Both the position numbers and the translations under genes were made by a program. Below, piece by piece: positions 1 through 61,865 of a DNA stretch of 64,000 nucleotides (the stretch's first letter is position 1; every line of letters begins with the position of its first letter). A model generated the notes under the pieces. It was not told where the DNA came from. It saw only the letters and a list, made by a program, of their open reading frames with translations, and ran no database searches. The stretch lies in the IMG/VR virus record IMGVR_UViG_3300029286_000009, positions 186,001 through 250,000 of that record. One strand, written 5' to 3'.

Positions 1-1067
1 CAGAGTATGACGATATGATTATAGAGAAGGGGACGAGAATATATAAATATTCATATATACATATAATACTATGCCCACTGTGTCTTTTATATAGAGAGCA
101 CCCGCACCCTTGTTTCTGACCTTTCGTTTTCATTTTGCCGCGTCTTTTTCGTTTTCTAGTCTTTATAACCCCTTGTTTTCCCTATTTTTTCTATTTAAGG
201 TCTTTTTGTCCCCGCTTTGACTCTATTTCCCATTTTTGTCTTCCCTGTTTTTACCCTTTCTAACCCTAATCTTCCACTTTAACTTTTCTTTGATTCCTTA
301 ATAGTAAAAACTACTTAACTAGCGTTGTACCAAATCGTATTTTTCATGATTTTTTCTGAAAAAGGTATCTCACTAATATCACTCATCTTCCTTTTTAAGG
401 GTGTCCCGATTTCCCATCCTGACAAAAAATACCTATTTTCACTTATGCGTAATTATTAAAGTAGTCATACGTGAGTATTTGTATATAAACATGCAAATAT
501 ACAAACAATTACTACACACAGTGACACCCTGCCCGCAATTAGCACATTTAACTACGCAACTATATACTATGAAACTGTGGCTGTTGTCTGGATCAGCCTG
601 AACTAAATACCAGTAGGTTGTATTTAATTTGGTTATGTTCTTTTTATTCTCTTGCGAAAGTTGAGGTGACTCCGATGCAAGAGCAACTACACTCAAGTGT
701 TCGAGGGTGTATAAACAGAGAGACGCCAGGCGTTGTTTCCTGTACCCAATAAACAATATGTTACCTGTGCATATAAACACTAGGTGGTATTAGACTCTCA
801 TATAACTCATAACATGGTCAGGGCAGACCTTTAATCCTCTTCGCCGAGGGTATCGTTAAGGGATATAAGATGAGTAAGAATACAAGGACAACGATTTTTT
901 CAAAAACAAATGAATATGTCTTCATTAAAGCTTTTCCCGCGATCTGCCAGTAAAAGGAGCTTGTCTAACTCAGAAAGAGGCGATCGGGAGATTGCTTTAG
1001 CTTTGTACAGCGCCCGCCAAAATTTTCTTTTATACACGCCTGCGTATAATTATATTTATAGTATAAT

Positions 1068-1210
1068 GGAGAGGGAACAAAGGATACCTGTTTACCGTAG
1101 TAGGCGGTACATAAGCTATACAGGTATCATCACCCTCTCCTATAGTAGCTGATAAAACCCGGCTCCCATCGGAGTTCCTCCTAGCTTCAAGGGCTCTGGG
1201 TTTTTCTTTC
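1068..1210 (+). ncRNA. Candidate small structured RNA
   Basis: Nested stems GGAGAGGG/CCCTCTCC, GATACCTGT/ACAGGTATC and TACCG/CGGTA, then a terminator-like stem with a T-run. Confidence 0.4.
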
Positions 1211-1779
1211 TTTGGGTGTGCTAATAGTTACACCCTGCGGTGCGGGATGCCTAAGGTGTGATGGCCCCGCAATCAAGACATATGCACCAGGAAAAGAAGT
1301 GGCTACCTTTCTCGGGGGGAGACCATTTCTTTTCTTGTACCTTTCTTTTCTTACCCACTAACCCAGTTAGTTTGAAGGGGTTATTACAATTATGCACGCG
1401 TGTTTATACTTATAGTAGAATAGAGGCATATCAAATTTTACTGGTGTGTCTCAATTTATACTTGGCAGTAGGAGGTTAAACTGCCAGAAGCTCGTCCCTC
1501 GTATTGTGCGGGGCTGAACGAGTGCAATTGTAAACATGATTTTCTTCTTTGGAAGGAGAAGGGAATGATTATCAGAGTTTACCCGGATGGCACGATCGAT
1601 CGTGTTATTGCGGTAGTGCGGCACTAGATGCCGCGGGGGAGTAGAAAGCACTCCCTGGCAACAGAAACAAAGGCTTTCATTATACCCGCGTGCAATTGTG
1701 TGGGTATAATATATGTAATAATTAATAGGAGAGAGACCCGCCATATAAAGGGGTTCAACGTCTTTTGTAGGAGGTTGTC

Positions 1780-2007
1780 ATGAAGGCTTTCACAATCGCT
1801 GGTGCATTGTTGGATCTCGCAATAACAAAATCGTATGCGGCTGTTCAGAGTGAGGTGAGGAACGAACTCACCAACGCGAAAGATTTCGTTGAGAAGATTA
1901 AATACGAACATGCGGTCAGAAAAGAACTGGCTGTAATCAACAGGCAGTCCGAGGAATTGAGGCGGCGACAGGCAGAGTATGCAGTCGCCCGGAAGTATTT
2001 CGGATGA
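1780..2007 (+). CDS. Hypothetical early protein, 75 aa
   Basis: Strong RBS AGGAGG; downstream of the promoter-like motif at about 1680-1720. Confidence 0.7.
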   Translation: MKAFTIAGALLDLAITKSYAAVQSEVRNELTNAKDFVEKIKYEHAVRKELAVINRQSEELRRRQAEYAVARKYFG

Positions 2008-2186
2008 CACGCCGTAACACGAGATGCAAGCCATTTTAGGCTTCTTCTCGCGTCGCGTGTCTTATTCTATTACGCGTAATGTATTATTATATATTATGAG
2101 TAATAGGACAGGACAATGTGCCTGCTCCTACTCCGGGAATTGATCAGCCTGGAGTTTGAATAAACCTGATCAGGAGGGATTGAGAC

Positions 2187-2399
2187 ATGAGAGCATTGGT
2201 CATAATAGGGGTAATTTTGGCGGTAGGTTACTACTTCTGCGTAGTGCCTATGAAGGCCGAGACCCAGGGGCTGAAGGGACAGATATCCCAGAAGATGGAG
2301 CAGATTCAAAGGTCGTCTCAACGAACGACCTGGGATCGACTGGTGCACCCCGGCACCAGCGATTTGGATCGGGTGATCCAGAAGGTGGCTGGCAAGTGA
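2187..2399 (+). CDS. Small membrane-anchored protein, 70 aa
   Basis: RBS GGAGG, N-terminal hydrophobic helix, followed by a terminator. Confidence 0.7.
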   Translation: MRALVIIGVILAVGYYFCVVPMKAETQGLKGQISQKMEQIQRSSQRTTWDRLVHPGTSDLDRVIQKVAGK

Positions 2400-2413
2400 C
2401 CAGCCATATAAAG

Positions 2414-2450
2414 AGAGTCTCCCCCTCGGTATTACGGGGAGGCTCTTTTT
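2414..2450 (+). terminator. Rho-independent terminator
   Basis: AGAGTCTCCCC...GGGGAGGCTCT stem followed by a T-run. Confidence 0.7.
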
Positions 2451-2504
2451 ATACCCGCACATAGTTAGGTTTTTTTGTTACGCGTGCATTATTATATATT
2501 AGGT

Positions 2505-2870
2505 AATAGTGGGAAGAAGGGACTGACGAGTTCTGGAACCCATAGTGCAGTGAGAGCTCATGACTCTTGTTGCACTCCAGGGGTTGACGACCCCGAGTCT
2601 ACTGGACGCCTTTACAAAGGTGCGTGAGAAACACCAATGTGAAGAAGAGGTAGGCGGGCTAGCAACTCAAAGCTAGCTTAAAGAATCTCTCGGATGGCTC
2701 AGCGTGCTTAACATTGTGTGTCGAGAGGCATACAATGGGGATAGGTTTGGTGCCTATTCTTGGAGCAGTGTGAGTGCAGAGAGTTCCTTCTAGAGTGACA
2801 AGTGGGCAGGTATGTCGCACTTACTCTAGGAGGTAGCAAGAAGACTGAGGGGAAACCTAAGGTCTTTTTG
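2505..2870 (+). ncRNA. Candidate multi-hairpin ncRNA of about 365 nt, family not recognised
   Basis: Promoter-like motif upstream; consecutive G-U-containing stems at 2544-2576, 2712-2737 (GAGA loop), 2738-2760 and 2786-2833; terminator at 2841-2869. Confidence 0.5.
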
Positions 2871-3249
2871 TCCCCGAACGGTTAGGAACGTATAAAACTG
2901 GGGGAATGTAGTAAAAATATAGATAGCCCCGCCCCCTTAACCCTTTGAAATCGCTAGACCTTTAGAAGACTAGATGTCCACCCCAAGGCGATATCCGTTC
3001 CGATGCTTTATCTAAGCCTATCTTATTGTTTTTATTCACTATTTTTCCTCTTCCCTTATCGTTGTTTATACATACCCCACTATATTCTCATCCCTGTTTA
3101 TTTATGCTTACTCCGCTGATCGGTTTTCTCTTATAAAACGCCCCTAAAATTTGTCGGGGCTTTCTGTAAAAGTTAAGGATGCTATTATAACATTATAATC
3201 ATGTTTTTGAGCCTACTTATTTAACCATCTAGCTAACTTCTATATAAAA

Positions 3250-4953
3250 TTGTTTACAAAAGGATACCAATTCATGATCACTTATATACCCCCTAGTGAG
3301 ACTGCTGCGCCAGATACTGATAGTCTACCTATTCCGACTGGTGCAGGTCAAATACCAGTATCAAAAGCTGATGGCTCTTACGAAGCTACCGATGCCGGTG
3401 ATATTAAGGTAAACAGTGTTGCGGCTACTGGGGAGTTGTCTTCTGCCTCTGTGGACACCGATGCGTTGTCCCTAAAAAGTGTAGACGAAAAACAACAAGG
3501 CAGTATTACTCCGGAAAGATTTTATGCAGCAGATGAAGATACTGGGTGTTCCTGTGAATTGCATCCGGTTGATGGTCTGACCCTTGCAACTACACTTATA
3601 GAAGGAAATATTGGGGCAGCAGAGTTAGTAATGCTCAGTTCGTTGTCTGATACTATTTTTTCGTCTAAGATGCTGACTGGTAGATTTGAGGTTCTACCGG
3701 CTTTTTATCAAACCGGGTCAACCCCAGGAACTGCTCAACTTAACGGGACCGGTATAGGGATAGGAATGCAATTTATTTGTCCTGCCACTTGTGCTCCTAC
3801 TGCTTTAAGTTTTCATCTCTCAGCTGTTGGATCAGCGGGTACACTAGGAGTAGCAATTTACGATATAACTACAAGCACAAATTTTACCTGCGGAACTACA
3901 GCGAGTATCTCCGCGACTGGGTGGTTCCGTCATACTTTTACAGCGGTCCAACTCTACGAAGGACATCAGTATGAAATACGAGTAACGTGGGTATCCGGCG
4001 ACCTAACTTTGACTCATCATAGAGTCCTACCTGGTCCTGGATGTGGTCATCCTGATTCGTGCACAGGGTTCTCTACGGCTGACAATTGGTCTACGGAAAC
4101 AGCACTCTTAACAGGTTACAGAGAATCTATCCCCAATTTTGTGTTGAATAGTAATGCTGATCATTGTCCCCAACTTGTTTACGGGGGTAACTCCACCGTT
4201 CTACTTCCTGGCTCCGCTGGAGCAACTACAGCTGCGGGGTTATTCCTGGATTGCTCTGCTTTAGTTGCAGGAACACTTTATTATCTCTATGGGTATTCTA
4301 CAGGAGGTGTTTTAGGGGTTGAGGCGTCGACAGTTGCCCCCACGAATTACGCCTTGGGAGATTTCGAGTATAAATCCACGGATTTAACAAGACGGCTCTT
4401 AGGAATGTTGATTCCAGAAGTTCTGATTGGCACAAGTGTTGGTCCCGTAATGGTATCTGACCGGTTATACGTAGCAAACATCAACCCAAAACTTCGTAAA
4501 ATTGGAAAGGTTAATCCTTATACAGTTCCAACAGCAGGAGCCGAAACAGCAGAGCTAATAGGTGCATATTATAGTTCTCCTGCTTCTTGGCGAGCAGATT
4601 CTGACGATTGGAAGGTAGAGGTATTAGTTATGATGCCTTCGCTCCTAGAAGCTAAGTGTTCGGCACAAACCGGTGCTGCCCCAGTAATCGGTATTGCACT
4701 TGATGGCAAGAAATTTAATCCGCAATTTAGTTCAATCGGAGGTGCAGAGTATGGAAATGGCCCATATGGTCATATCGTAGCCAACTTTTCTGCTTCACTT
4801 TCCAGGGGGAATCATTATCTATACCCAATTGCATGGATACGCTCTGACATTGCAGGACAGACTTTAAACTATATATATATGGTGCGGCTGCGGGGGAGAT
4901 TAACTCAATGGCTACTTTCAATGGACAAATTTTGGCATAAGGAACAAAAATGA
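3250..4953 (+). CDS. Fibre / receptor-binding-like virion protein; C-terminus probably frameshifted, start probably ATG 3274
   Basis: Thr/Gly/Ser-rich; C-terminal domain resembles that of 50644..52719; followed by a paralog of the gene that follows that fibre. Confidence 0.65.
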   Translation: MFTKGYQFMITYIPPSETAAPDTDSLPIPTGAGQIPVSKADGSYEATDAGDIKVNSVAATGELSSASVDTDALSLKSVDEKQQGSITPERFYAADEDTGCSCELHPVDGLTLATTLIEGNIGAAELVMLSSLSDTIFSSKMLTGRFEVLPAFYQTGSTPGTAQLNGTGIGIGMQFICPATCAPTALSFHLSAVGSAGTLGVAIYDITTSTNFTCGTTASISATGWFRHTFTAVQLYEGHQYEIRVTWVSGDLTLTHHRVLPGPGCGHPDSCTGFSTADNWSTETALLTGYRESIPNFVLNSNADHCPQLVYGGNSTVLLPGSAGATTAAGLFLDCSALVAGTLYYLYGYSTGGVLGVEASTVAPTNYALGDFEYKSTDLTRRLLGMLIPEVLIGTSVGPVMVSDRLYVANINPKLRKIGKVNPYTVPTAGAETAELIGAYYSSPASWRADSDDWKVEVLVMMPSLLEAKCSAQTGAAPVIGIALDGKKFNPQFSSIGGAEYGNGPYGHIVANFSASLSRGNHYLYPIAWIRSDIAGQTLNYIYMVRLRGRLTQWLLSMDKFWHKEQK

Positions 4954-7893: not shown

Positions 7894-9183
7894 TTAATCT
7901 AACATACTTACTAGCCCTTTTTCCAGAGCTATTTTTCTGTCTATAACTAAAATACCTGTATCACCCATTTTTTTCACCCGAGATTGTTCTTTAATTGCAA
8001 ACTTGGGTATAAATACTTTTTCCCCGTCCACTTCACATAGTAGTGCCTTATTAACTCCTGTGTCTTGGAGCACTCTTACATTATCAATTGTAGCTACTCC
8101 TGTTACGGTTGGAAGCTTATCTGCGTGCCTAAAAGCGTGGCACGTTGCACATAGTGGACGAAAATCTGTCCACAATTCAAAACCTACTCGATCGTATAGC
8201 ATGTGATGTAGGTGCACTGTAGACAGAGAAATTGGACGCAAACAATCCCAACAGCGATCAAACGGACCAGTAGGAGTAATCATGGCAGCTTTTTTGTTGC
8301 ACCACTCTGGCATCTTACGATATTCTTCATAAGATTTTTTTTCAAATCGTTTTACACCCATCACTTGGTTATTGGCTAGTATCTCGGTTATGTTGGTCTC
8401 TATAAATTTTAACTGCCGCCTAATCACGTCTCTTGAATAAAAGAAATACTTTAACACAATAGCATCAATCCGCATATGAAACTGATGATAATCTACAAAC
8501 ATCTGCATAGCTATCGCAAGTGGAACTGGTAAAGACTTTTTTGCTGGTATACCCCATTGTTTGCGATAATTTTCAAAATCAGTGCTATTACGTAGCTGAA
8601 AAGGAAAGTAAAGCGTTAAGACATCTTTGCTCCACCCTTTCCCTATGTATAAGCTTTTAAACCACTCCTTTGTTAGTGGGGTTACCGCAATTTTAGGTTC
8701 TACATAGTTAGACGCGTAGTTATCCCAACGATACTGAATACGAGGATATACCCATTCAGCTGCTCGTGGATCGTCTGCTATGAGTCCTCGGAGCAGTGTT
8801 ATGTCTTCATGGCATAGTTCTTGTTCTTTATCCCACTTACTCTTAAGCTCATATTTACCGCGAGTCATAACCGCAAATAATACATCTTCTGCCCAATCTC
8901 TAAAGGCTTTGGCTCTATCAGTCTTAGCTAGCATTGCTGCTCTTATGACTCCGTGGTAACTGATTACTCGTAGTTCTTGATTGCCTCCAGGTGTCGTCAT
9001 TTTGACGACCCCCTGTTTAGACTTGAATTCATCGGTATTTCTGTCTATTAAACGGTAAAAATTATGCGTGTTTGAATAACCTAGAGCGGCTGCGATGTGG
9101 GACATAACTGCCCACCGGTTTCCTTCGTGGTCATAAATTTCTATTTCTGTGTTTTCAAATTTTACTAATTCTGTATTATTCAT
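7894..9183 (-). CDS. Bro-N domain protein with C-terminal HNH nuclease
   Basis: N-terminal TPGGNQ...ISYHGV...AKAFRDW (Bro-N); C-terminal CWDC...LHH..Y...LCATCH. Confidence 0.8.
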   Translation of the reverse strand: MNNTELVKFENTEIEIYDHEGNRWAVMSHIAAALGYSNTHNFYRLIDRNTDEFKSKQGVVKMTTPGGNQELRVISYHGVIRAAMLAKTDRAKAFRDWAEDVLFAVMTRGKYELKSKWDKEQELCHEDITLLRGLIADDPRAAEWVYPRIQYRWDNYASNYVEPKIAVTPLTKEWFKSLYIGKGWSKDVLTLYFPFQLRNSTDFENYRKQWGIPAKKSLPVPLAIAMQMFVDYHQFHMRIDAIVLKYFFYSRDVIRRQLKFIETNITEILANNQVMGVKRFEKKSYEEYRKMPEWCNKKAAMITPTGPFDRCWDCLRPISLSTVHLHHMLYDRVGFELWTDFRPLCATCHAFRHADKLPTVTGVATIDNVRVLQDTGVNKALLCEVDGEKVFIPKFAIKEQSRVKKMGDTGILVIDRKIALEKGLVSMLD

Positions 9184-29103: not shown

Positions 29104-29621
29104 GGGGCACACAGGTATCGACAGACGTTATGAGTAGATTTGTATTGGTGGTCGGTGTGAGTGGTACCGTAAATCATTCGAATTATAAATGCCGAAGATA
29201 ATTCTTTCGACATGCTCTCAGCTTTTTGTGAAGCCGACCGTAAGGTTAGTGTAGCATACGCTGGTTAATAGGGCGGAGTTCCCAGTAACTTATCAACAGA
29301 AAACTGGGTGGCGGAGGCAAGTGGGTTTTATACCTGCTTCCTCTCCTGGTTACGAGGCTAAACTGACCTGGTGGAGGCACGCGGGAAACCGCGTCCCCTA
29401 AATCCTATGCAAGTAGGTATCCTAGTGTCAGGCATTAGGATAGAGATGGGTAGGGTAATCGCCACCGTGCGGGAAACCAAACCTTCTAGCCCGCAAAAGT
29501 CAGCGGCGGGGTCTCGAAAAGGCTGGCAAACTCTCTGTCGGGAGTATAAATATGGACTACACCATCTAAATTTACATTTCGAAAGGCGGACTGGATCTGG
29601 GTTCGACTCCCAGGTGCTCCA
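29104..29621 (+). ncRNA. ssrA: tmRNA
   Basis: Acceptor stem GGGGCAC/GTGCTCC-A with G3-U70; T-arm CTGGGTTCGACTCCCAG; 5' GGTATCGAC; resume context ATAAAT-GCC at 29191; tag ORF to 29268. Confidence 0.92.
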
Positions 29622-29898
29622 TAAAATTGTCTTATAACAAAGCATTGCTCCCGAAGACATACAAGATTTGTATAATAAACATTGTAATTGGGTCGATGTC
29701 AAAGGTTTTAGGCATCTCCGATCGCCAACTGCGACGTATCCGAAAGATGCATATTAGCTGATCTGCCATGTGTAGAAACAGTAAAGTTAACGTCAACAGT
29801 GCTAGGCGGGGCGTTGATGGTTGATACTAGTCTAGCGGGGGAATAGTTAACGTGACTGTTCCCCCATTTCATATGTAAAGAAGGTAAGGAGAGGTTAA

Positions 29899-31125
29899 AT
29901 GGCGGAAGTTTTGAGTCAAGAAGTAGTTGTATATCAAGAGCATATAGTGGATTTTTATGGAGACCAAATTATATCGATACAGGATGAAAATAATGATGTG
30001 TGGTCTCCTGTAAAGGGATTGTGTGGTGCGATTGGCATCAAAGGTGTCCAAGACCAGATTAACAAAATTAAAAATGACGGGGCCTTCAGATTCAAGGCTA
30101 GCCTTGTAACTGCCCTAGATGGTAAGAATTACTCAACTTTTTGTATTCACGCTGATGATATTCCGATGTGGTTAGCAACAATTGGTACCGGTCGCGTTGA
30201 TGAGAGTGTAAAAAGTAAGTTGATTCTATATAAGAGAGAGTGTGCTAATGTATTGCGGGACTACTGGACTAAGGGTGCTGCTGTAAATCCCCGTTTGGGT
30301 AATCTTGATGTAGACCAGATTAAGAACATTGTTAATGAAGCTCTACAGGTTGCATTGGACGAATACAGACAGGCTAGGACGCCTGAGGAAATTGCTCAAC
30401 TTATCTTTGAGCGAGACGTTGTTATTTTGGCTGAGACGGCGAACCGTGTAGAAAGTCCCTTTCGTGATTCTATTTACAGACGCATCGAAGTGCTTATGGA
30501 CAGTCGTTTTGGTAAACTAGAACCTGCTGAAGAAGCAGAATTAGTAAAGGGACTTACTCCTTTGACCGAGAGCCTATTCCGTAAGCTATATTTGGGGCAG
30601 GGTTGGTGCCGAGATAAACTAGCTCTTTATTTCCCTAAGGAACTGAGTAGCAAGACACAGTTTGACCAGCTCCTAAAGATGTGGGATATTCCAGCACCTA
30701 AAAGGCAGTCTAGAACTTCTATCGCTTTCGCCCGCCGACTTTTGCGAGAAAATCATGTTAATAAGAAGACCATAAATCAGTTGATTACTGAGTTCAATAG
30801 GTCGCGGGAGTCTATTTTGCGGGCTATCAGTGATCAATGGAATTCTTTGAACAAGTCTTTCAAGAAATATTGCACCGCAGGCATAATTCCTAAAGGCAGG
30901 GCTTACAGTGATTATATTGATAGGTCTCCACTTTGGGTAGCCAAGCGTGAAGCTTTTAAGGAGACTTTTGATAATACTTGTTTCTATTGTGGATACCAGT
31001 CCCCTACTGGTATTGCGGTACACCATCTAAACTATATCCGTAGCGGACAAGAACTACCAACAGATTTGGAAATTGTTTGTAACACTTGCCACCAGAAGCG
31101 GCACAAAGAGAAGTATAACGTGTAA
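29899..31125 (+). CDS. P22 antirepressor N-terminal domain plus C-terminal HNH protein
   Basis: V.FYGD.I, LC.AIGI, WL..I, L..YK.EC..VL.DYWTKG.A.NPR; CFYC...HHLNY...CNTCH. Confidence 0.82.
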   Translation: MAEVLSQEVVVYQEHIVDFYGDQIISIQDENNDVWSPVKGLCGAIGIKGVQDQINKIKNDGAFRFKASLVTALDGKNYSTFCIHADDIPMWLATIGTGRVDESVKSKLILYKRECANVLRDYWTKGAAVNPRLGNLDVDQIKNIVNEALQVALDEYRQARTPEEIAQLIFERDVVILAETANRVESPFRDSIYRRIEVLMDSRFGKLEPAEEAELVKGLTPLTESLFRKLYLGQGWCRDKLALYFPKELSSKTQFDQLLKMWDIPAPKRQSRTSIAFARRLLRENHVNKKTINQLITEFNRSRESILRAISDQWNSLNKSFKKYCTAGIIPKGRAYSDYIDRSPLWVAKREAFKETFDNTCFYCGYQSPTGIAVHHLNYIRSGQELPTDLEIVCNTCHQKRHKEKYNV

Positions 31126-37240: not shown

Positions 37241-38437
37241 ATGGAAAAAATGGGAAAGGAAATAGTAACAAAGGAATTTAATTTTATGGAAGACACTATT
37301 GTGGCGGTTGACCAAAACGATGTGTGGTATATTTCTCCACGACATATTTGTGAAAATGTAGGATTAGATTGGGCTTCTCAGAGTAGAAAAATTGAGAAGG
37401 AGTCTGAGAAGTTCAACCGTTGTCTTATGACAACAGTTGGTCACGATGGTAAACTGCGTGAAATGGTTATGATACCTGTGACACGTATAAATACATGGAT
37501 ATTGAGTATCAATGCAAAGCGTGTCAAAAACTTAAGAGTAAGAGCATATCTACGGAAATACCAAGATCAGCTATCCGATTGGTTGTATGAAGCGGGATTT
37601 CTAGGAGCGGCGGTAAATAAGGATGTGTTGTTACTCCCTGCGGAACGACAGGTGGAAGTATTGGGAGATGCTCTTCACAGAGCTCGCTTGCAAAGTGAAC
37701 CATTGAATGAGTATCAAGAGAAGATAGCGACCATTTTAGGTTTACCTGACTTAGAAGGGATGGATAAATATAAGACTCAGCGTCTGCAGATGTTGACAGA
37801 TGTTAAATTAGGTGTTGCTAGTCCTTTGTTCTCAAAAGGTTTGCGGGGAGTAGTAAGACTAACTGATGAACTATTTTACATCGCTTATATGATAGAAAGG
37901 TGGTGTGTTGATAAGCTGATTTGCTGTTTTCCACAAGACTTGCCCACGCCTGTGGCGATAGAGCAATATATAAGAGATAAAGGTTATTGTGAACCTTGGG
38001 TGGTTAAACCCATTAGGCACGCAGATGCACGAAGGGTGGTTAAGCTTAATACTCTGTTTAGCTATAGTATTTCTGATTTAATAATACGATTTAATAAACC
38101 AGCTGAATTGATACACAATGCTATGTTTAGAGTAGTAAAAGATATGGAGGATGTATTTACTGCGACTGAAGTTAAACTGGAACTTCCAGCCATAAGAGAC
38201 AGAGCCAGTATGTCAGCTAGGCGGGAGCAGTATATGAAAACGGCTGAGTGGTGGGATAAGCGAAACGCTTTTTTCAAAGTTTTCAATTGTTGTGTAGTTT
38301 GTGGGGATATGGAGGTTGCATCTTCGCGATTTGAGGCACACCACTTGCACTATGATACATTAGGATTTGAGTCACCTTGGGATTTAGTGCCCTTGTGTAA
38401 AGATTGTCATACTAAGGTAGAAGGAAGGAGTAGGTGA
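37241..38437 (+). CDS. P22 antirepressor N-terminal domain plus C-terminal HNH protein
   Basis: ICENVGLDWASQ..K, DGKLREM, WILSIN..RVK; CVVC...HHLHY...LCKDCH. Confidence 0.82.
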   Translation: MEKMGKEIVTKEFNFMEDTIVAVDQNDVWYISPRHICENVGLDWASQSRKIEKESEKFNRCLMTTVGHDGKLREMVMIPVTRINTWILSINAKRVKNLRVRAYLRKYQDQLSDWLYEAGFLGAAVNKDVLLLPAERQVEVLGDALHRARLQSEPLNEYQEKIATILGLPDLEGMDKYKTQRLQMLTDVKLGVASPLFSKGLRGVVRLTDELFYIAYMIERWCVDKLICCFPQDLPTPVAIEQYIRDKGYCEPWVVKPIRHADARRVVKLNTLFSYSISDLIIRFNKPAELIHNAMFRVVKDMEDVFTATEVKLELPAIRDRASMSARREQYMKTAEWWDKRNAFFKVFNCCVVCGDMEVASSRFEAHHLHYDTLGFESPWDLVPLCKDCHTKVEGRSR

Positions 38438-38992: not shown

Positions 38993-39226
38993 GTCAACCA
39001 CCCCACGCCTAAAGGCGGGGGCTTGAAAGAGCCTTGGTTGACTAGGGGGCATTAATTTGCAGCAGTTGAGAACCAGAAATACATACACACCCCAAAATAT
39101 TCCGCACGTTTCGGGCGACTGTGGTTGGACATTAAAAGTCCTGGTGGGTAGGGACGGTGTGTCCAGCTTAAAAACGGTTTCCAACAATCCCGATGCGGTC
39201 CCAACCTCAGAAAAGAGGAGCGAAAC
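38993..39226 (+). ncRNA. omega-RNA (HEARO-like) scaffold
   Basis: About 230-nt structured leader of iscB with GTCAACC/GGTTGAC closing stem. Confidence 0.8.
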
Positions 39227-40435
39227 TTGAGAGTATTTGTTAAAAATCAAAAAGGTAATCCATTAATGCCGACTACTCCAAGAGGAGCAAGAGTGCTTCT
39301 CTGTGCAGGGAAAGCGGTAGTGGTTAAACGAACACCGTTCACTATCCAACTCACAGCAGCAACTGGCGAGACAAAACAGCCTGTCGTCTTAGGTGTAGAC
39401 AGCGGCTTCACTCACGTCGGTTTATCTGCGGTATCAGACAGGGCTGAATTGTATGCGGCAGAAGTCTTATTACGCACCGACATGGTTAAGCTCAATGCCG
39501 AACGAGCAATGTATCGACGTAACAGGCGAAGTCGCAAGACATGGTACCGTCAACCGAGGTTCCTTAATAGGTCGAAACCGAAGGGTTGGTTGGCACCTAG
39601 TATTCAGCACAAACTAGACTCACATAAGAAGTTGATCGACAAGGTAAAAGGACTGCTGCCAATCACCAAGGTTGTTATTGAGGTTGCCGCATTTGATATT
39701 CAGAAGATTAAAAATCCTGAGATATTCGGCGAAGGCTACCAGAATGGTGAGCAGTCCGGTTTTTGGAATGTCAGGGAGTATGTATTTCACAGGGACAGCC
39801 ACAAGTGCCAAGCTCCAAAGTGTAATCATAAAGACAAAATACTTAACGTCCATCATGTTGTTAGCCGGCAGACAGGCGGTGATAGACCCCATAATCTAAT
39901 TACACTTTGTGAAACCTGTCACAAGAGTCACCATAAAAAAGCACTAGACCTTAAGATCAATGCGGGAAACGGATTCAAAGCAGAAACGTTCATGTCAATG
40001 GTAAGGTGGAGATTAACTCAGGACACAGGCTCACAACACACATTTGGTTATATCACAAAAACAAATCGCATTGCTGCACGTTTAGAGAAGTCTCATATCA
40101 ACGATGCTTTCATTATTGCAGGTGGTGGACAGAATCGGACCACAGCATTAACGATCAAACAAGTAAGAAAGTGCAATCGCAAACTATACAAAGGCAGCCG
40201 AAGCCACATCAGGAATACTGCCCCACGTGAAATATTAGGTTATCGACGCTTCGATAAGGTGAAGTGGGGTCGTGTTGAAGCCTTTATTTTCGGAAGACGA
40301 TCCACTGGCAATTTCGATATCAGGGACGGCAACGGGAAAAGTCTCCACAAATCTATTAACGCAAAACACATTAGGTTGCTGGAAAGAGCTTCAACAAGCT
40401 TGATTTCCAGAACCTCACTTCCTCCCCAGTGCTAA
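39227..40435 (+). CDS. iscB: IscB RNA-guided nuclease
   Basis: PLMP, RuvC-I GVDSG, RRNRRSRK bridge helix, IEVAAFD, HNH (VHH...N...CETCH), SHINDA. Confidence 0.95.
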   Translation: MRVFVKNQKGNPLMPTTPRGARVLLCAGKAVVVKRTPFTIQLTAATGETKQPVVLGVDSGFTHVGLSAVSDRAELYAAEVLLRTDMVKLNAERAMYRRNRRSRKTWYRQPRFLNRSKPKGWLAPSIQHKLDSHKKLIDKVKGLLPITKVVIEVAAFDIQKIKNPEIFGEGYQNGEQSGFWNVREYVFHRDSHKCQAPKCNHKDKILNVHHVVSRQTGGDRPHNLITLCETCHKSHHKKALDLKINAGNGFKAETFMSMVRWRLTQDTGSQHTFGYITKTNRIAARLEKSHINDAFIIAGGGQNRTTALTIKQVRKCNRKLYKGSRSHIRNTAPREILGYRRFDKVKWGRVEAFIFGRRSTGNFDIRDGNGKSLHKSINAKHIRLLERASTSLISRTSLPPQC

Positions 40436-49317: not shown

Positions 49318-50577
49318 ATGTCTACAACAATTCAAATTAGAAGAGGTTTAAAAATCAATTTGCCCACTTTGGAAGAGGGGGAATTAGCTTATACAGTAGA
49401 CGAAAATCTTGTGTACGTTGGGGATGGTTCGCATAACTATTGTGTAGGTAATGTAGCTTCGGGGGTGGGAAACCCTTCAGGAAATTTAGTTGCTGGGCGT
49501 GTATATGTCAATACTGCTAGTGGTACGATCTTCTTTTGTAATGGTTCTGAATGGGTGGGTATCGGTGGTTCGGTTGGCACTTTAGATGATATTCAGGATG
49601 GCATTAATTATCAGCGTGTAGCTGCATCCGAAGTAGACTCTTCGGGGTATGTTATTCAAATCAACGATGGAACTCACTCTGTTACAGCAGAACAAAGCAG
49701 AGATCACATTGATAATGCAACAATTCACAGGTCTATTAATGACAGCGGCTCCTCTAATATAGATTTATGGTCAGCCCAGAGAATTATGGACCAGTTGGGG
49801 ATTGCCATTAGAGGAATTGATTGGCAGTCATCAGTTCTGACTATTTCAGGTAGCCCGCCCGTTGGACCCGCAGAAGGGGAACGTTATATTATCTCTGTTG
49901 GTGCTACGGGGGGTTGGACAACTTATGATAATTACATTTCAGAGTGGACAGTTGCTAGTGGAACTTGGGTAATGACTCAACCTAATGAAGGTTTTGCAGC
50001 TTGGGTTGAGGATGTAGACAAACTCTATTTGTATACCGGTAATACTTGGACTCCCATGTCCTCAGTAACTCACCATAACTATCTGTCTGGTTTGGACGGC
50101 GGGAGCGAAGGAAGTTATTATCATCTTTCTCCTGCAGACTTTGCTGCCCTGACAACCAATCGTGCTGATACTGTTAAAGCTATTGTAGGACCCATGGCTT
50201 CAGGGACTCAAACATCTATCTCAGTTGACTACAACGAACCTCTAGGCGTATTCGATTTTGTAGTTAGTGTTGCTCACTCAGCTACTACAGGGCAAACAGC
50301 TGATGATCACCACGCAGAACAACATGCCCTTACAAGTTCTACAGTGCACACAGTAACAACGGTATCTGGTTATGTATTAAGAGCAACAGGAACTAATACC
50401 TTTGATTTTGGTCCTCTTATATCTACTGATTTACCTCTTCATGCTTCTAGACATCAGCATGGTGGTGACGATGAAGTTGCTACAGCTACGCCTGCGGCAA
50501 ATGCCATTCCGAAGTCAACGGCGGGGGCTGATTTGAATAATTGGATAACTCTTTTGGACGGGGGTAGTTTTGTCTAA
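49318..50577 (+). CDS. Fibre protein with Mtd-N-like anchor and DUF2793-like domain
   Basis: IQIRRG....L..GELA..D...YVGDG; PP.GP.EG.RYI...W...PNEG. Confidence 0.7.
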   Translation: MSTTIQIRRGLKINLPTLEEGELAYTVDENLVYVGDGSHNYCVGNVASGVGNPSGNLVAGRVYVNTASGTIFFCNGSEWVGIGGSVGTLDDIQDGINYQRVAASEVDSSGYVIQINDGTHSVTAEQSRDHIDNATIHRSINDSGSSNIDLWSAQRIMDQLGIAIRGIDWQSSVLTISGSPPVGPAEGERYIISVGATGGWTTYDNYISEWTVASGTWVMTQPNEGFAAWVEDVDKLYLYTGNTWTPMSSVTHHNYLSGLDGGSEGSYYHLSPADFAALTTNRADTVKAIVGPMASGTQTSISVDYNEPLGVFDFVVSVAHSATTGQTADDHHAEQHALTSSTVHTVTTVSGYVLRATGTNTFDFGPLISTDLPLHASRHQHGGDDEVATATPAANAIPKSTAGADLNNWITLLDGGSFV

Positions 50578-50643: not shown

Positions 50644-52719
50644 ATGTCAACAGTTATTCAAGTTAAAAGAGGTACTGAGGCACAGATATTAGAAAACCCA
50701 ATGGCAGTTGGGGAGTTAGCCCTATGTACCTCAACTTGCTCAATTTTTTCTTATAACGGTGTAACCAAATGCCTGATTGGTAAAGCAATCGTAGATACTT
50801 ATGACAATATGACTACTTACAGCGGTGTAAGTGGCCGCTTCTTCTTCAGTTCTGACACGGGAAATTTGTATGTTCATACAGGAACAGTCTGGTCTGGTAT
50901 TTCTTTATTAGACAACTATATAACTTCTTCAACTTTATCCACAACCAGTGGCAATATTGTATCACAAATAATCATCTCACATGGCAGTTTACAGAATTTA
51001 AACACTGATGATCACACACAGTATTTCTTAGCAGACGGTTCTAGAGAATTATCTGGTAATTTACTACCAGAGATGACTGGTGCTAGTGGTGTAGTGTCAA
51101 CGCGGGACTTAGGCAGTCCTACCCAGAAAATAAATAATATTTATGTGCATGATGTCCGTATGGGTGGGGAATCGTTATATGTGAATGATAAACTCATTCT
51201 GTATGATACATCACCTGAATTAGTTTTTAGAACAGATGCGAATCAGGATTTATCTCTAAAGACGTACGGACTTGGTGACATAAACCTAATATCAGATCAT
51301 GCTGATGTGGGTTTAGTTGCCTACGACACTTTTTCTGTTATAGCTGAAACAGTAGATTTATGGGCGGACGTCAAAGTTACTGGAAAGGTTTCATCTTCAG
51401 AAGGATTCCAGATCAATGAAGCTGCTCCAGCAGGTCAGTTTTTGAGGTCTAATGGGACAGTGTTTTTTGGTGGAACAATTCAAACTGGGGATATCCCCGA
51501 TATTTCTGCAAACTATATAACTCCTGCTAGATTAACTACTGTGTCGGGTGATCTCATTACTCAAATCCCTTCATTAGAAGAGTATGCAACCCAAAGTTGG
51601 GCAAATGGACAATTCATTACACCAGTTGTTCTGACAACTACTAGCGGAGATATAGTAACACAAATTCCGAGTTTAACAAATTATGTTACTACGTCTACTC
51701 TATCTACTGTAAGTGGGAATATAATGACGCAGATTCCTGATGTGGTGGGAGGAAGATTGGATTATGTTTCAACAACCCAGATAAAATGGTCATTTTTAAA
51801 TTCAAATCAGGTACGAATTTTCAACAATTCTACTTTTCTCGAAGAGGTTGTTAACTGTTCTTCTGAGCCTACTCTTTCATCTACAGGTAATGATATAGGT
51901 GGTGTAGCAATAACCTACGATACAGTTTATGATATATTTGCGGTTTACACTAGTGCTACTACTATCGCATTGGCTGTTGCTAAATGGGCTGTATCTACTG
52001 CTGGTTCTAGTGCAAGATATGCTGCGTGGGTTACGAGTACGGATTATAAAGTAGGGGATAAAGTGTCTAACGGTGGTTCCTATTACCCATGTATTGCGGC
52101 ACATACATCTGATACTTTTGCTACAGATTTAGCTGCTGGAAAATGGGGACCAGCCATGGCTGGTACCGGAGATCTTTTGGGGTTGGATATACTTGGTGGT
52201 TCTCCTGTTTTTTCGAATACCGGTGCATGGCGGGGGTATAGATGGTTAGGGACAGTTACAACTTTTAATGATTCGGGATCGAAGTTTAAGAGTAGCACAA
52301 CGCAATTATCTATTTCAAATTATTATAATGCTAAATTATTTAGGATTGGTCCTGCAAATGTAACTGCATCTTGGACGTATGATACTGCTGTTTGGAGGGA
52401 AAGCAATACAGGAACTGGGCAGACAAGAGCTGTTCATGCCCCATGTAGAACACAGTATGTTACCGGAGTAATAAGTGAGCATACGAATACTGCTGTTGGT
52501 GGGGCAATTTGGCTTGGTATCGCCGTAGACTCATCTACTACTAATACTGTTACTGCTTCTCACGCTTTTTCTAGCACTTGGTTTTGGCTTGTAAATCCCA
52601 TTTCTTTTTCATTGGCTAAAGGCTATCATTATATTACGTCATTAGAATATCCACAGGCTGGAGTTAATACGATTATGGGTGGTGGCTACTTACAAACCCA
52701 TATAATGATACTTGCATAA
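50644..52719 (+). CDS. Fibre / receptor-binding protein with Mtd-N-like anchor and CBM5/12-like insert
   Basis: IQVKRG...GELA; TTxSG repeats; AW....Y.VGDKV...G..Y.C..AHTS. Confidence 0.7.
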   Translation: MSTVIQVKRGTEAQILENPMAVGELALCTSTCSIFSYNGVTKCLIGKAIVDTYDNMTTYSGVSGRFFFSSDTGNLYVHTGTVWSGISLLDNYITSSTLSTTSGNIVSQIIISHGSLQNLNTDDHTQYFLADGSRELSGNLLPEMTGASGVVSTRDLGSPTQKINNIYVHDVRMGGESLYVNDKLILYDTSPELVFRTDANQDLSLKTYGLGDINLISDHADVGLVAYDTFSVIAETVDLWADVKVTGKVSSSEGFQINEAAPAGQFLRSNGTVFFGGTIQTGDIPDISANYITPARLTTVSGDLITQIPSLEEYATQSWANGQFITPVVLTTTSGDIVTQIPSLTNYVTTSTLSTVSGNIMTQIPDVVGGRLDYVSTTQIKWSFLNSNQVRIFNNSTFLEEVVNCSSEPTLSSTGNDIGGVAITYDTVYDIFAVYTSATTIALAVAKWAVSTAGSSARYAAWVTSTDYKVGDKVSNGGSYYPCIAAHTSDTFATDLAAGKWGPAMAGTGDLLGLDILGGSPVFSNTGAWRGYRWLGTVTTFNDSGSKFKSSTTQLSISNYYNAKLFRIGPANVTASWTYDTAVWRESNTGTGQTRAVHAPCRTQYVTGVISEHTNTAVGGAIWLGIAVDSSTTNTVTASHAFSSTWFWLVNPISFSLAKGYHYITSLEYPQAGVNTIMGGGYLQTHIMILA

Positions 52720-60622: not shown

Positions 60623-61865
60623 CGAAATTCCTTGGTTTAAAGCCCCCGAATTTATTCGTGGGCTTTCATGAAAAACACGGAATCATTTAACTTCCTTTGT
60701 GTCAAAATATAGTAGGTGCGTAAAATATGAGAAAGTCTTTTCAATACAGGATTTATCCAACTAAGAAGCAACAAACATTGCTGCTAAATACCCTTGAGCA
60801 ATGCAGGCGGTTGTATAATCATCTGCTGGAACAGCGTAAAAATAGTTGGGAACAATTCCATAAAGGGCTTTCTCTCTATGACCAACAAGCAACCTTTCCT
60901 ACACTGAAAGAACGCGTTCCTGAACTTAAAGACATTCATTCTCAAGTTTTGCAAAATGTAGCCGTCAGAATAGACCTTGCATTTAAGGCTTTCTTCCGCA
61001 GAGTGAAACAAGGTGTCGATCCCGGATATCCTCGGTTTCGTGGATTCGGTAGATATGACTCCTTCACATACCCTCAAACTGGATTCAGACTCAACGAAAA
61101 ATCCGTAAGTCTTTCCAAAATTGGGAAAGTAAAAGCAGTAATTCATAGACCAACTGAAGGGACAATCAAGACTTGTACCATTAGAAAAACTGCAACTCAG
61201 AAATGGTTTATCTCTTTCTCTTGCGAAGTAGATAGAAATATTCTCCCTGACAATACTGTCTCTGTTGGGCTTGACGCAGGACTCTCTTCGTTCATGACAC
61301 TCTCTAATGGTGAAAAGGTTGATAACCCTCGTTTCTTTAAACAAGAGGCTAAAAATCTTGCAAAGGTTCAACGCAGACTTTCCAAACAAACCAAAGGAAC
61401 CCGTAAGAGGCACAAGTGTCGCAAGATAGTTTCTCGCGTTCATGAGCGAATCACGAACAAGAGAAAAGATTTTGCTCACAAGCTGTCTCGTAAACTCATA
61501 GACGCCTATGGTGTGATAGCTATTGAAGACCTGTCCATCAATAATATGCAAAAAGATAACTTTCGCTGCATTAACCGTGGAATAGCAGACGTGGCTTGGC
61601 GAAATTTCTTTGATATGCTGGTCTACAAGGCAGAATGCGCCGGTAGAATAGTAATCAAAGTCAATCCCGCCTACACTAGCCAAATTTGCTCACATTGTGG
61701 ATATCGTCAAAAGATTCCATTATCAACTAGAGTTTTTAAGTGCCCATGTTGTAATTTCGAAATTGATAGAGATGTTAATGCTGCGATAAATATTCTCAGT
61801 CTGGGGCTACAGACTGTTGGCTCTGCCAAAGAAGCCCCCCGCCTTTAGGCGTGGGGAATAGTCAC
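60623..61865 (+). mobile_element. IS200/IS605-family TnpB-only element
   Basis: Follows TTAC (60619-60622); left hairpin near 60640-60665; right hairpin GAAGCCCCCCGCCTTTAGGCGTGGGG ending in TCAC. Confidence 0.8.
60727..61848 (+). CDS. tnpB: TnpB RNA-guided nuclease
   Basis: YRIYPT HTH, GYPRF, GLDAG, IEDL, TSQICS.CG, DRDVNAA.NI. Confidence 0.95.
   Translation: MRKSFQYRIYPTKKQQTLLLNTLEQCRRLYNHLLEQRKNSWEQFHKGLSLYDQQATFPTLKERVPELKDIHSQVLQNVAVRIDLAFKAFFRRVKQGVDPGYPRFRGFGRYDSFTYPQTGFRLNEKSVSLSKIGKVKAVIHRPTEGTIKTCTIRKTATQKWFISFSCEVDRNILPDNTVSVGLDAGLSSFMTLSNGEKVDNPRFFKQEAKNLAKVQRRLSKQTKGTRKRHKCRKIVSRVHERITNKRKDFAHKLSRKLIDAYGVIAIEDLSINNMQKDNFRCINRGIADVAWRNFFDMLVYKAECAGRIVIKVNPAYTSQICSHCGYRQKIPLSTRVFKCPCCNFEIDRDVNAAINILSLGLQTVGSAKEAPRL

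What the first reader, a model, noticed from the sequence alone, without database searches (positions are those of the whole stretch)
660..2880. Array of promoter - structured RNA - terminator units in a nearly gene-free 3 kb
Seen: five copies of a TTATAC(A/C)CGC/ACGCGT plus TATAAT-like motif, each followed by 150-370 nt of back-to-back hairpins and mostly a terminator; only two units carry a convincing ORF. Many stems depend on G-U pairs (e.g. GAGGCATATCA/TGGTGTGTCTC near 1424-1452), so they fold as plus-strand RNA rather than as DNA palindromes. Established: large phages often place immediate-early host-takeover modules behind tandem strong promoters. Inference: here the products may largely be small RNAs (decoys, sponges or anti-defence RNAs). 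I recognise no known family, so this is the best candidate for an undescribed system.
Basis: partly seen in the sequence, partly recalled or inferred. Interest (0 to 1): 0.75.

Follow-up and report, generated by a model that had tools for sequence, protein, structure and literature searches.

The report
Phage cassette array with ORF-free RNAs
A nearly gene-free 3.7 kb of an uncultivated 260-kb lake phage is a row of short promoter-to-terminator cassettes: two encode tiny proteins and at least two probably make stably folded RNAs with no known family, but nobody has yet seen the transcripts.

Summary
The window is part of a 259.7-kb freshwater jumbo-phage contig. Between window -475 and 3274, public gene callers and my ORF scans find only two genes: 75 aa (1780-2007) and 70 aa (2187-2399). 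Recoding any single stop codon does not add genes.

The repeated motif is real and clustered. It always follows a terminator T-run: hairpin, AAGGyTCTTTTT, then (T)ACCCGCG or ACGCGT, then an AT-rich TATAAT-like -10. It is better called a terminator-promoter junction module than a -35 box.

Plus-strand RNA folding is well above shuffled controls. The last unit, U5 (2508-2880), has z = -6.4 to -7.1 on the plus strand and -2.1 to -2.5 on the minus strand. U2 (1422-1675) has z = -4.6 to -5.1. U1 is weak, and 660-1030 is not structured.

A 545-kb relative (terminase 61% identical) has a syntenic array. Most of its cassettes carry small ORFs. Its last unit is a 636-nt ORF-free RNA with z = -7.6, without sequence or covariance-model similarity to U5.

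There are no Rfam matches, no usable homologues for covariation and no RNA runs. Verdict: an early-type cassette array in which U5 and U2 are good candidate non-coding RNAs. The decoy or sponge function is untested.

The parts
748..782 (+). Promoter-like box copy (ATGTTACCTGTGC...). It is 80% identical over 35 nt to the element directly upstream of the 118-aa gene at window -888.
   Evidence: the repeat finder family D8; regex scan
790..1030 (+). ORF-poor stretch 'Uc'. Not significantly structured. Holds a possible 27-aa micro-ORF (870-953) with a weak Shine-Dalgarno site.
   Evidence: z = -0.38 on the plus strand; ORF scoring
1022..1067 (+). Junction/promoter P1: T-run, TTATACACGC (1030-1039), then TATAAT-like hexamers (1045-1050, 1057-1067).
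   Evidence: P1 and P2 share a 22-nt segment at 86% identity (D17)
1068..1340 (+). Unit U1, ORF-free. Contains a 5' hairpin (about 1068-1140), a terminator-like hairpin with T-run (about 1153-1212), then three more hairpins (1214-1337).
   Evidence: fold z = -2.0 plus strand, -1.3 minus strand; hairpin list
1326..1365 (+). Conserved 39-nt CT-rich element (TTCTTTTCTTGTACC...CCCACTAACCC) just upstream of P2.
   Evidence: 90-95% identical in relatives G001 (two copies) and G002, while neighbouring proteins are not conserved
1390..1421 (+). Promoter P2: TTATGCACGCGTG box (1390-1402), then TATAGT/TAGAAT -10 candidates (1411-1421).
1422..1675 (+). Unit U2: six hairpins and no gene call. It holds a 20-aa micro-ORF (1565-1627) whose Shine-Dalgarno site is paired inside a hairpin.
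   Evidence: z = -4.55 and -5.1 plus strand vs -2.7 minus strand; 17 of 83 pairs are G-U; ORF scoring
1669..1715 (+). Junction/promoter P3: AAAGGCTTTCATTATACCCGCGTG, then TATAAT at 1705-1710.
1716..2062 (+). Unit U3: 5' leader, 75-aa ORF (1780-2007; strong Shine-Dalgarno site; N-terminal hydrophobic segment followed by a charged helical part), and a 3' hairpin at 2006-2061.
   Evidence: gene calls; codon score 11.0 with SD; hairpin z = -5.6; only self-hits among 5.8 billion proteins
2062..2099 (+). Promoter P4: 12-bp palindrome ATTACGCGTAAT (2069-2080), then TATATT/TATTAT.
2100..2450 (+). Unit U4: 70-aa ORF (2187-2399; N-terminal transmembrane-like helix) and a canonical intrinsic terminator at 2410-2450.
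   Evidence: gene calls; terminator scan; terminator z = -3.8
2446..2507 (+). Double junction/promoter P5: TTTTTATACCCGC (2446-2458), a second T-run with TTACGCGTGC (2470-2487), then an AT-rich -10 region.
2508..2876 (+). Unit U5: an ORF-free RNA of about 370 nt with nine hairpins. It ends in a terminator (2836-2871) that contains the 19-nt repeat (2858-2876; other copy at 196-214).
   Evidence: MFE -156.5 kcal/mol. z = -6.41 and -7.07 on the plus strand; -2.50 and -2.14 on the minus strand. DNA parameters give -3.2 and -1.9. 26 of 127 pairs are G-U. Repeat.
2878..2916 (+). Conserved element directly after U5 (…GAACGTATAAAACTGGGGGAATGTA…).
   Evidence: 85% identical to G001 at the same position after its last unit

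Best explanation
This is a tandem array of short, self-contained transcription cassettes in the small-gene (probably early) block of an uncultivated freshwater jumbo phage.

Each cassette starts at a conserved junction module. The module consists of the previous unit's terminator hairpin and T-run, a (T)ACCCGCG or ACGCGT box, and an AT-rich TATAAT-like -10. Each cassette ends at its own hairpin terminator. Host RNA polymerase probably reads the cassettes, and a factor may bind the partly palindromic box. Both of these points are inference.

Two cassettes (U3, U4) express small membrane-anchored proteins, like most cassettes of the relative's array. At least U5 (about 370 nt) and U2 (about 250 nt) are most likely expressed as stable, hairpin-dense, untranslated RNAs. 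U1 is a less certain third.

U5 and its positional counterpart in the relative share no sequence. I therefore infer that whatever these RNAs do depends on generic hairpin-rich structure, such as protein or RNase binding, or decoy or stability roles, and that they evolve fast.

Shown: the anatomy, the clustering, the folding statistics and the synteny. Inferred: transcription, timing and trans action.
For: - The junction module is clustered: 5 of 13 genome hits lie in 4 kb, against 2-9 genome-wide in shuffles. All exact copies in the window lie in the region.
- The same module and an array in the same order are present in G001, whose terminase is 61% identical.
- Only two ORFs are called, and recoding does not help.
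- The region has the lowest running plus-strand z of 50 kb scanned.
- U5 has z = -6.4 to -7.1 and U2 has z = -4.6 to -5.1, with strand asymmetry and 20% G-U pairs.
- RNA parameters give a stronger signal than DNA parameters.
- G001's last unit is 636 nt, ORF-free, with z = -7.6.
- G001 also has an ORF-free unit of about 165 nt after its CT element, as U2 follows the CT element here.
- No phage sigma-70 region 2, T7-type polymerase or beta-prime was found.
Against: - There is no transcript evidence. No RNA run was listed, and the DNA contigs laid on the region gave only the same phage.
- There is no covariation. All nine public copies are at least 99.9% identical. Covariance models of two U5 domains find nothing in four relatives. 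U5 and the G001 unit do not align.
- No sigma-70-type -35 is present, and the promoter scan is not above shuffles.
- U1 and 660-1030 fold weakly or not at all.
- Micro-ORFs with Shine-Dalgarno sites exist.
- Most cassettes in the relative are coding.
Confidence: 0.5

Rival explanations
1. The hairpin-dense units act in cis and are not functional RNAs. They are stacked terminators or insulators and stability elements. They close the plus-strand small-gene block and shield the neighbouring AT-rich, strand-skewed stretch (a possible origin or terminal region) and the downstream genes from read-through.
For: - The box travels with terminator T-runs.
- U5 and its G001 counterpart are each the last unit of the array and are followed by the same conserved element.
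- They lack sequence conservation.
- In G001 the array ends against convergently oriented genes.
- An AT-rich repeat region with purine-rich and CT-rich tracts adjoins the array in both phages.
Against: - Only the last of the nine U5 hairpins has a T-run. One good terminator would suffice.
- U5 has its own promoter-like module directly upstream. A pure insulator would not need one.
Confidence: 0.2
2. The 'empty' units are mRNAs for micro-proteins of 40 aa or fewer that gene callers miss. The RNA structure regulates their translation.
For: - A 20-aa ORF at 1565-1627 has an AAGGAG Shine-Dalgarno site. A 27-aa ORF lies at 870-953 and a 38-aa ORF at 2560-2676.
- Neighbouring cassettes and the relative's cassettes encode small proteins.
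Against: - Codon scores are within the null range.
- The 20-aa ORF's Shine-Dalgarno site is sequestered in a 14-bp hairpin.
- The U5 ORFs lack Shine-Dalgarno sites.
- Nothing in the region is conserved at protein level in relatives.
Confidence: 0.15
3. The units are decaying remnants of former small-gene cassettes in a fast-turnover region, with no present function. The apparent structure comes from leftover terminators and complementary purine-rich and CT-rich tracts.
For: - The neighbourhood evolves very fast: one conserved protein in 28 kb versus G001.
- A duplicated promoter copy at 748-782 has no gene behind it.
- U1's main hairpin pairs low-complexity purine-rich and CT-rich runs.
Against: - The U5 and U2 stems are of complex sequence and fold 4.5-7 sd better than dinucleotide shuffles, on one strand only.
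- The region is identical across samples of 2019 and 2021.
- An equally extreme ORF-free unit sits at the same position in G001.
Confidence: 0.1

Closest known systems
Host-takeover / early gene modules of large virulent phages (SPO1 terminal-redundancy module, T5 pre-early region, T7 A1-A3 promoters); from my own knowledge, not tested here
   Same: Dense tandem promoters and terminators driving many very small genes in one orientation. Likely read by host RNA polymerase.
   Different: Those modules are mostly protein-coding and use near-consensus sigma-70/sigma-A promoters. Here only 12% of 3.7 kb is coding. There is no -35 consensus. A lineage-specific CCCGCG/ACGCGT box follows each terminator.
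RNA-seq-defined ncRNAs of jumbo phage PA5oct (ncRNA1 236 nt, ncRNA2 451 nt, in the terminal-repeat region; PMC7318152)
   Same: Jumbo phage relying on host polymerase. ORF-free segments of similar length without database similarity.
   Different: The PA5oct RNAs are defined by expression (2-5% of phage reads), with no promoters recognised. Here promoters, terminators and folds are predicted, but expression is unknown. A terminal-repeat location is not established.
Morons (autonomous promoter-ORF-terminator cassettes in phage genomes); from my own knowledge
   Same: U3 and U4 have exactly this anatomy.
   Different: Morons are usually single insertions in late regions of temperate phages. Here the cassettes form an array that shares one junction module, and several lack an ORF.
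Large structured ncRNAs associated with phages (ROOL, GOLLD, HEARO) in Rfam
   Same: Length class (370-640 nt), multi-hairpin, phage-borne.
   Different: No match at gathering score, nor at E up to 5, in window 1-3400. Those families are conserved with covariation, whereas U5 has no detectable homologue.
T4 middle promoters (-10 plus a MotA box at -30 replacing the -35); from my own knowledge
   Same: A TATAAT-like -10 without a -35, plus a phage-specific upstream box.
   Different: The box sequence is unrelated. Its spacing to the -10 varies from 2 to 21 nt. MotA/AsiA homologues were not searched for.

Membership tests
Any curated Rfam family (riboswitches, ribozymes, 6S, ROOL, GOLLD, HEARO, sRNAs) | Covariance-model score at or above the family's gathering score | tested here: not met
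   Only the tmRNA (29104-29624) and HEARO (38993-39205) pass in the window. Window 1-3400 at E up to 5 gives three chance-level hits.
Intrinsic (Rho-independent) terminator | G+C-rich hairpin immediately followed by a T-run on the transcribed strand | tested here: met
   Met for U4 (2410-2450), U5 (2836-2871), U1 (about 1153-1212) and the U1 distal hairpin 1288-1337. U2 and U3 end in hairpins with weak T-runs, so those two are inconclusive.
Sigma-70-type promoter | A -35 TTGACA-like hexamer 16-18 nt upstream of a TATAAT-like -10 | tested here: not met
   -10-like hexamers are present at every unit. The two-hexamer scan gives only 9/12 matches at 1029 and 1383, and its total count (14) is not above shuffles (11.3 +/- 3.4).
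T4-type middle promoter (activator box replacing the -35) | Box at a fixed position, about -30, relative to the -10 | tested here: not met
   The distance from the box to the nearest -10 varies from 2 to 21 nt across G000 and G001 copies. The distance to the preceding T-run is constant at 2-4 nt.
T4-type middle promoter (activator box replacing the -35) | MotA/AsiA-like activator and co-activator encoded by the phage | not tested
   I searched only for sigma-70 region 2, T7-type RNA polymerase and beta-prime; none was found.
Conserved structured-RNA family (new or old) | Homologues in related genomes with compensatory base changes | tested here: not met
   All nine public copies are at least 99.9% identical. 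Models R1 and R2 of U5 domains find nothing significant in G001-G004. blastn and MAFFT find no similarity to the G001 unit. Protein-guided searches found no closer relatives.
Structured RNA by thermodynamic criterion | MFE far below dinucleotide shuffles, on one strand only | tested here: met
   U5: -6.4 to -7.1 versus -2.1 to -2.5. U2: -4.6 to -5.1 versus -2.7. U1: only -2.0. Region 790-1030: -0.4.
Expression-defined phage ncRNA (PA5oct type) | Discrete abundant transcript from an ORF-free locus | not testable with these tools
   No RNA run was listed. The single read-laying run returned DNA contigs only.
Lambda-type late leader (short terminated transcript read through by an antiterminator into late genes) | Unit lies directly upstream of, and co-oriented with, a late operon in related phages | tested here: inconclusive
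   In G000, two co-oriented genes follow U5 after 400 nt and a further hairpin. In G001 the counterpart is followed by convergent genes. No antiterminator was sought.
Type I toxin-antitoxin locus | Small hydrophobic toxin ORF with an overlapping antisense RNA promoter | tested here: inconclusive
   The 70-aa ORF has an N-terminal hydrophobic helix. No convincing minus-strand promoter was found in the unit. The cassettes are not paralogous.

The most novel reading that the evidence does not exclude
A lineage of freshwater jumbo and megaphages devotes part of its most promoter-dense early locus to fast-evolving, hairpin-dense, untranslated RNAs. These are about 250-640 nt long, and a large one always closes the array. 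They would act in trans, for example as decoys or sponges for host RNases, dsRNA- or RNA-sensing defence proteins or RNA chaperones. Selection would act on generic structure rather than sequence, and expression would come from a lineage-specific terminator-promoter junction module.
Probability: 0.15. Interest if true: 0.8.

Novelty: new variant of a known kind. Interest (0 to 1): 0.5.

Why it matters
Large phages are annotated almost entirely by their proteins. A locus where the conserved parts are cis elements and the products seem to be structured RNAs points to an RNA-based layer of early infection that annotation pipelines skip. The 39-nt CT-rich element is 90-95% identical between phages whose terminases are 51-61% identical.

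If U5-type RNAs are expressed, they would be new large phage ncRNAs in the same size class as ROOL and GOLLD, but apparently evolving without sequence conservation. The junction module would be a compact natural terminator-plus-promoter part and a marker for finding such arrays in other uncultivated phages.

If the units turn out to be cis insulators or micro-ORF mRNAs, the locus is an ordinary, if unusually gene-poor, early region.

Tried and rejected
- Rfam, at gathering scores and at E up to 5: nothing in the region.
- ARAGORN: no tRNA-like genes.
- Alternative genetic codes (TAG, TGA or TAA as sense): no hidden long ORFs. Rejected.
- Pfam and PHROGs on the two ORFs and the neighbouring genes: no hits for the ORFs.
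- Homologues of the 75-aa ORF, the 559-aa neighbour and the AAA_33 kinase among 5.8 billion proteins: only self-hits, plus one non-syntenic 55% relative.
- Nine public contigs carrying the locus: all at least 99.9% identical, so useless for covariation.
- Read laying on four DNA runs: low-depth contigs of the same phage, no variants, no end information.
- RNA runs: none listed.
- INPHARED blastn: no match. The terminase has only about 25% identity to Bacillus phages.
- CT-element pattern in IMG/VR and in JGI metagenomes: only G001, G002 and chance hits. The second conserved element finds only G001.
- Single-sequence covariance models of two U5 domains against four relatives: no hit in the syntenic locus.
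- Antisense or similarity search of U1, U2 and U5 against the phage's own genome: only the 19-nt repeat.
- IscB homologues as a clue to the host: spread over many phyla, so uninformative.
- Reading the box as a -35 element: rejected because its spacing to the -10 varies.
- Codon-usage scoring: too weak to decide on ORFs under 40 aa.
Full report
**Source and setting.** The window is bases 186001-250000 of a 259,732-bp IMG/VR virus record, judged 96% complete with 42% G+C. The same sequence occurs in lake and freshwater metagenomes from 2019 and 2021. The phage has no close cultured relative. Its large terminase is about 25% identical to those of Bacillus phages. Four uncultivated relatives were found through the terminase:
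- G001, 545 kb, 61% identity.
- G002, 256 kb, 51% identity.
- G003, a 67-kb fragment.
- G004, 211 kb, 49% identity.

The finding lies near the end of a plus-strand block of small genes (genome 162-191 kb) that has a higher G+C than the rest of the genome. I found no phage sigma-70 region 2, T7-type polymerase or beta-prime. Transcription by the host polymerase is therefore the default assumption.

**Checking the observation: gene poverty.** Between window -475 and 3274, gene callers on nine public contigs report only a 75-aa ORF (1780-2007) and a 70-aa ORF (2187-2399). My ORF list and a codon and Shine-Dalgarno score agree. Both ORFs have strong Shine-Dalgarno sites. Everything else is within the null range, except micro-ORFs of 20 aa (1565-1627) and 27 aa (870-953) that have Shine-Dalgarno sites. 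Reading TAG, TGA or TAA as sense does not produce long ORFs, so stop-codon recoding is not the explanation. Coding density is about 12% over 3.7 kb, in a genome that is otherwise densely coding.

**Checking the observation: the motif.** TTATACMCGC occurs exactly three times in the 64-kb window, all here (1030, 1680, 2449), with a one-mismatch copy at 1390. ACGCGT-type boxes are at 1396, 2072 and 2480.

Aligning all copies from this phage and from G001 shows what the motif really is. It consists of the 3' arm and T-run of the preceding hairpin (AAGGyTCTTTTT), then 2-4 nt, then (T)ACCCGCG or ACGCGT, then an AT-rich stretch with TATAAT-like hexamers. The first transcribed bases are often ATAGAG or GGAGAG.

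The distance from the box to the T-run is constant. The distance to the nearest -10 varies from 2 to 21 nt. It is therefore a terminator-promoter junction module rather than a -35 element. The generic sigma-70 scan is not enriched here.

A strict pattern for the module has 13 plus-strand hits genome-wide (2-9 in 20 shuffles), five of them within 4 kb here. Related copies continue upstream of the window, at genome 185125, 185608 and 185881, with weaker ones to 176 kb. The 19-nt exact repeat at 196-214 and 2858-2876 is one such module.

**Checking the observation: folding.** I ran a sliding scan over genome 150-200 kb (150-nt windows, dinucleotide shuffles). Windows 1051-2850 have mean z = -3.0 on the plus strand. 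This compares with -0.49 (sd 1.3) elsewhere and -1.7 on the minus strand. It is the lowest running mean in the 50 kb.

Results per unit:

| Unit | Coordinates | z, plus strand | z, minus strand |
|---|---|---|---|
| U5 | 2508-2880 | -7.07 and -6.41 | -2.14 and -2.50 |
| U2 | 1422-1675 | -5.1 and -4.55 | -2.7 |
| U1 | 1072-1385 | -2.0 | -1.3 |
| Uc | 790-1030 | -0.4 | -1.6 |

A fifth of the predicted pairs in U5 and U2 are G-U. With DNA parameters the U5 signal drops to -3.2 on the plus strand and -1.9 on the minus strand. Its lower boundary (660) is too generous.

**Comparison with relatives.** blastn of the region against the four relatives gave only two short, strong matches.
- A 39-nt CT-rich element (1326-1365) is present twice in G001 and once in G002 at 90-95% identity.
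- The element at 2878-2916 is present in G001.

Scans of IMG/VR and the JGI metagenomes with these elements found no further relatives.

Read on its minus strand, the G001 locus (L025 14400 to 7900) has the same parts in the same order:
1. Junction modules.
2. A purine-rich, then AT-rich, then CT-rich stretch.
3. The CT element.
4. More cassettes.
5. A last unit, followed by the conserved 2878-2916 element.

About eight of its eleven or so cassettes carry small ORFs of 58-170 aa. Several have an N-terminal hydrophobic helix and a charged tail, like the 75-aa and 70-aa ORFs here.

Three G001 units are ORF-free:
- The stretch holding the skewed tracts.
- A unit of about 165 nt right after CT element a (z = -5.1 and -4.2). 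Its position parallels U2 here.
- The last unit: 636 nt, -267 kcal/mol, z = -7.6. Its position parallels U5.

U5 and that last unit nevertheless share no sequence. Covariance models of two U5 domains find nothing in the syntenic locus of any relative. Proteins of the neighbourhood are also not conserved: one hit in 28 kb and none inside the region. The cis elements are the most conserved feature of the locus.

**What could not be obtained.** All nine public contigs with the locus are at least 99.9% identical. Protein-guided searches found no relative of intermediate distance with synteny. No RNA run was listed. The single read-laying run returned low-depth DNA contigs of the same phage. I therefore have neither covariation nor expression evidence.

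**Interpretation.** The best-supported reading is a tandem array of autonomous cassettes built from one junction module. U3 and U4 are small-protein cassettes. U5 and U2 are the real candidates for non-coding RNAs, and U1 is a weak one.

U5 has its own promoter-like module, nine hairpins of complex sequence and a canonical terminator. It is G-rich and C-poor, which is the composition expected of an untranslated RNA that must escape Rho. That last point is inference from general knowledge.

The positional counterpart in G001 is equally structured but unrelated in sequence. Any function is therefore likely to rest on generic hairpin density. It could be binding or titrating a protein (RNase III or E, a chaperone, a defence sensor), or a cis role as a terminator stack or insulator at the end of the block. 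I cannot separate these, and I give the trans-acting ncRNA reading about 0.5. The alternatives are:
- cis insulator or origin-associated transcription, 0.2;
- micro-ORF mRNAs, 0.15;
- decaying cassettes, 0.1.

The specific 'decoy, sponge or anti-defence' idea remains speculation.

**Comparison with known systems.**
- The architecture resembles the early host-takeover modules of large virulent phages and 'moron' cassettes (my own knowledge).
- The nearest documented case of ORF-free, unexplained RNAs in a jumbo phage is PA5oct. There, RNA-seq defined four ncRNAs, two of which (236 and 451 nt) lie in the terminal-repeat region and make up 2-5% of phage reads (PMC7318152).
- Membership in any Rfam family, in sigma-70 consensus promoters or in T4-type middle promoters fails the tests I could run.
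- The units cannot yet be called an RNA family, because no homologues exist.

I rate this a new variant of a known kind. It is interesting mainly for U5, the junction module and the conserved CT element, and it is limited by the absence of expression and covariation data.

Noticed in passing
window 29104-29624: Phage-borne tmRNA (Rfam 61.9 bits; ARAGORN) with an unusual predicted tag peptide, ASSPGYEAKLTWWRHAGNRVP*, that lacks the usual hydrophobic C-terminal end.
   Followed up: no
window 38993-40435 and 60727-61848: HEARO (omega) RNA directly upstream of an IscB gene (RRXRR + HNH domains), plus a separate TnpB gene (OrfB_IS605, Cas12f1-like TNB). These are RNA-guided nuclease elements inside a jumbo phage. 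IscB homologues at 50-67% identity are spread over many anoxic-sediment MAG phyla.
   Followed up: partly
L002 15700-16600 (window -300 to 600): An AT-rich (30-37% G+C), strongly strand-skewed stretch: purine-rich, then CT-rich. It has a 152-nt tandem repeat of promoter-like units, three copies of a 28-nt TATA-rich repeat, and an inverted pair. The same order of tracts occurs in G001 (L025 11250 to 10700, minus strand). It could be an origin (R-loop type), a packaging site or a terminal region.
   Followed up: partly
window 1326-1365; L025 14090-14054 and 10274-10240 (minus strand); L026 732-693 (minus strand): A 39-nt CT-rich element (two TTCTTTTCTT half-sites around GTACC, then CCCACTAACCC, then a small ACCC/GGGT hairpin). 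It is 90-95% identical between phages whose neighbouring proteins are not conserved, and it always lies just upstream of a promoter-like region. A weaker copy is at L002 15043-15070.
   Followed up: partly
window 2878-2916; L025 7991-7954 (minus strand): A second conserved non-coding element, directly after the last unit of the array in both phages. The motif ATAGCCCCGCCC (window 2923) recurs next to CT element b in G001.
   Followed up: partly
L002 14500-14800 (genome 184.5-184.8 kb): Exceptionally stable predicted folding inside the called 169-aa ORF (down to -74 kcal/mol per 150 nt; z = -2.6 to -5.4 on the plus strand and -3.1 to -5.1 on the minus strand), with local G+C of 54-60%.
   Followed up: no
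window 49318-50577 and 50644-52719: Two adjacent proteins with an Mtd_N (major tropism determinant N-terminal) domain. One also has DUF2793, the other a CBM_5_12 domain. They are tail-fibre-like. I did not look for a diversity-generating retroelement.
   Followed up: no
L004 (ENA contig k141_1529915): The same phage is assembled as a 320,389-bp contig elsewhere, about 57 kb longer on the left than the 259,732-bp record. This may reflect a concatemeric or permuted assembly, or a more complete genome.
   Followed up: no
window 7894-9183, 29899-31125, 37241-38437: Several anti-repressor-type proteins: one Bro-N and two P22_AR_N paralogues.
   Followed up: no
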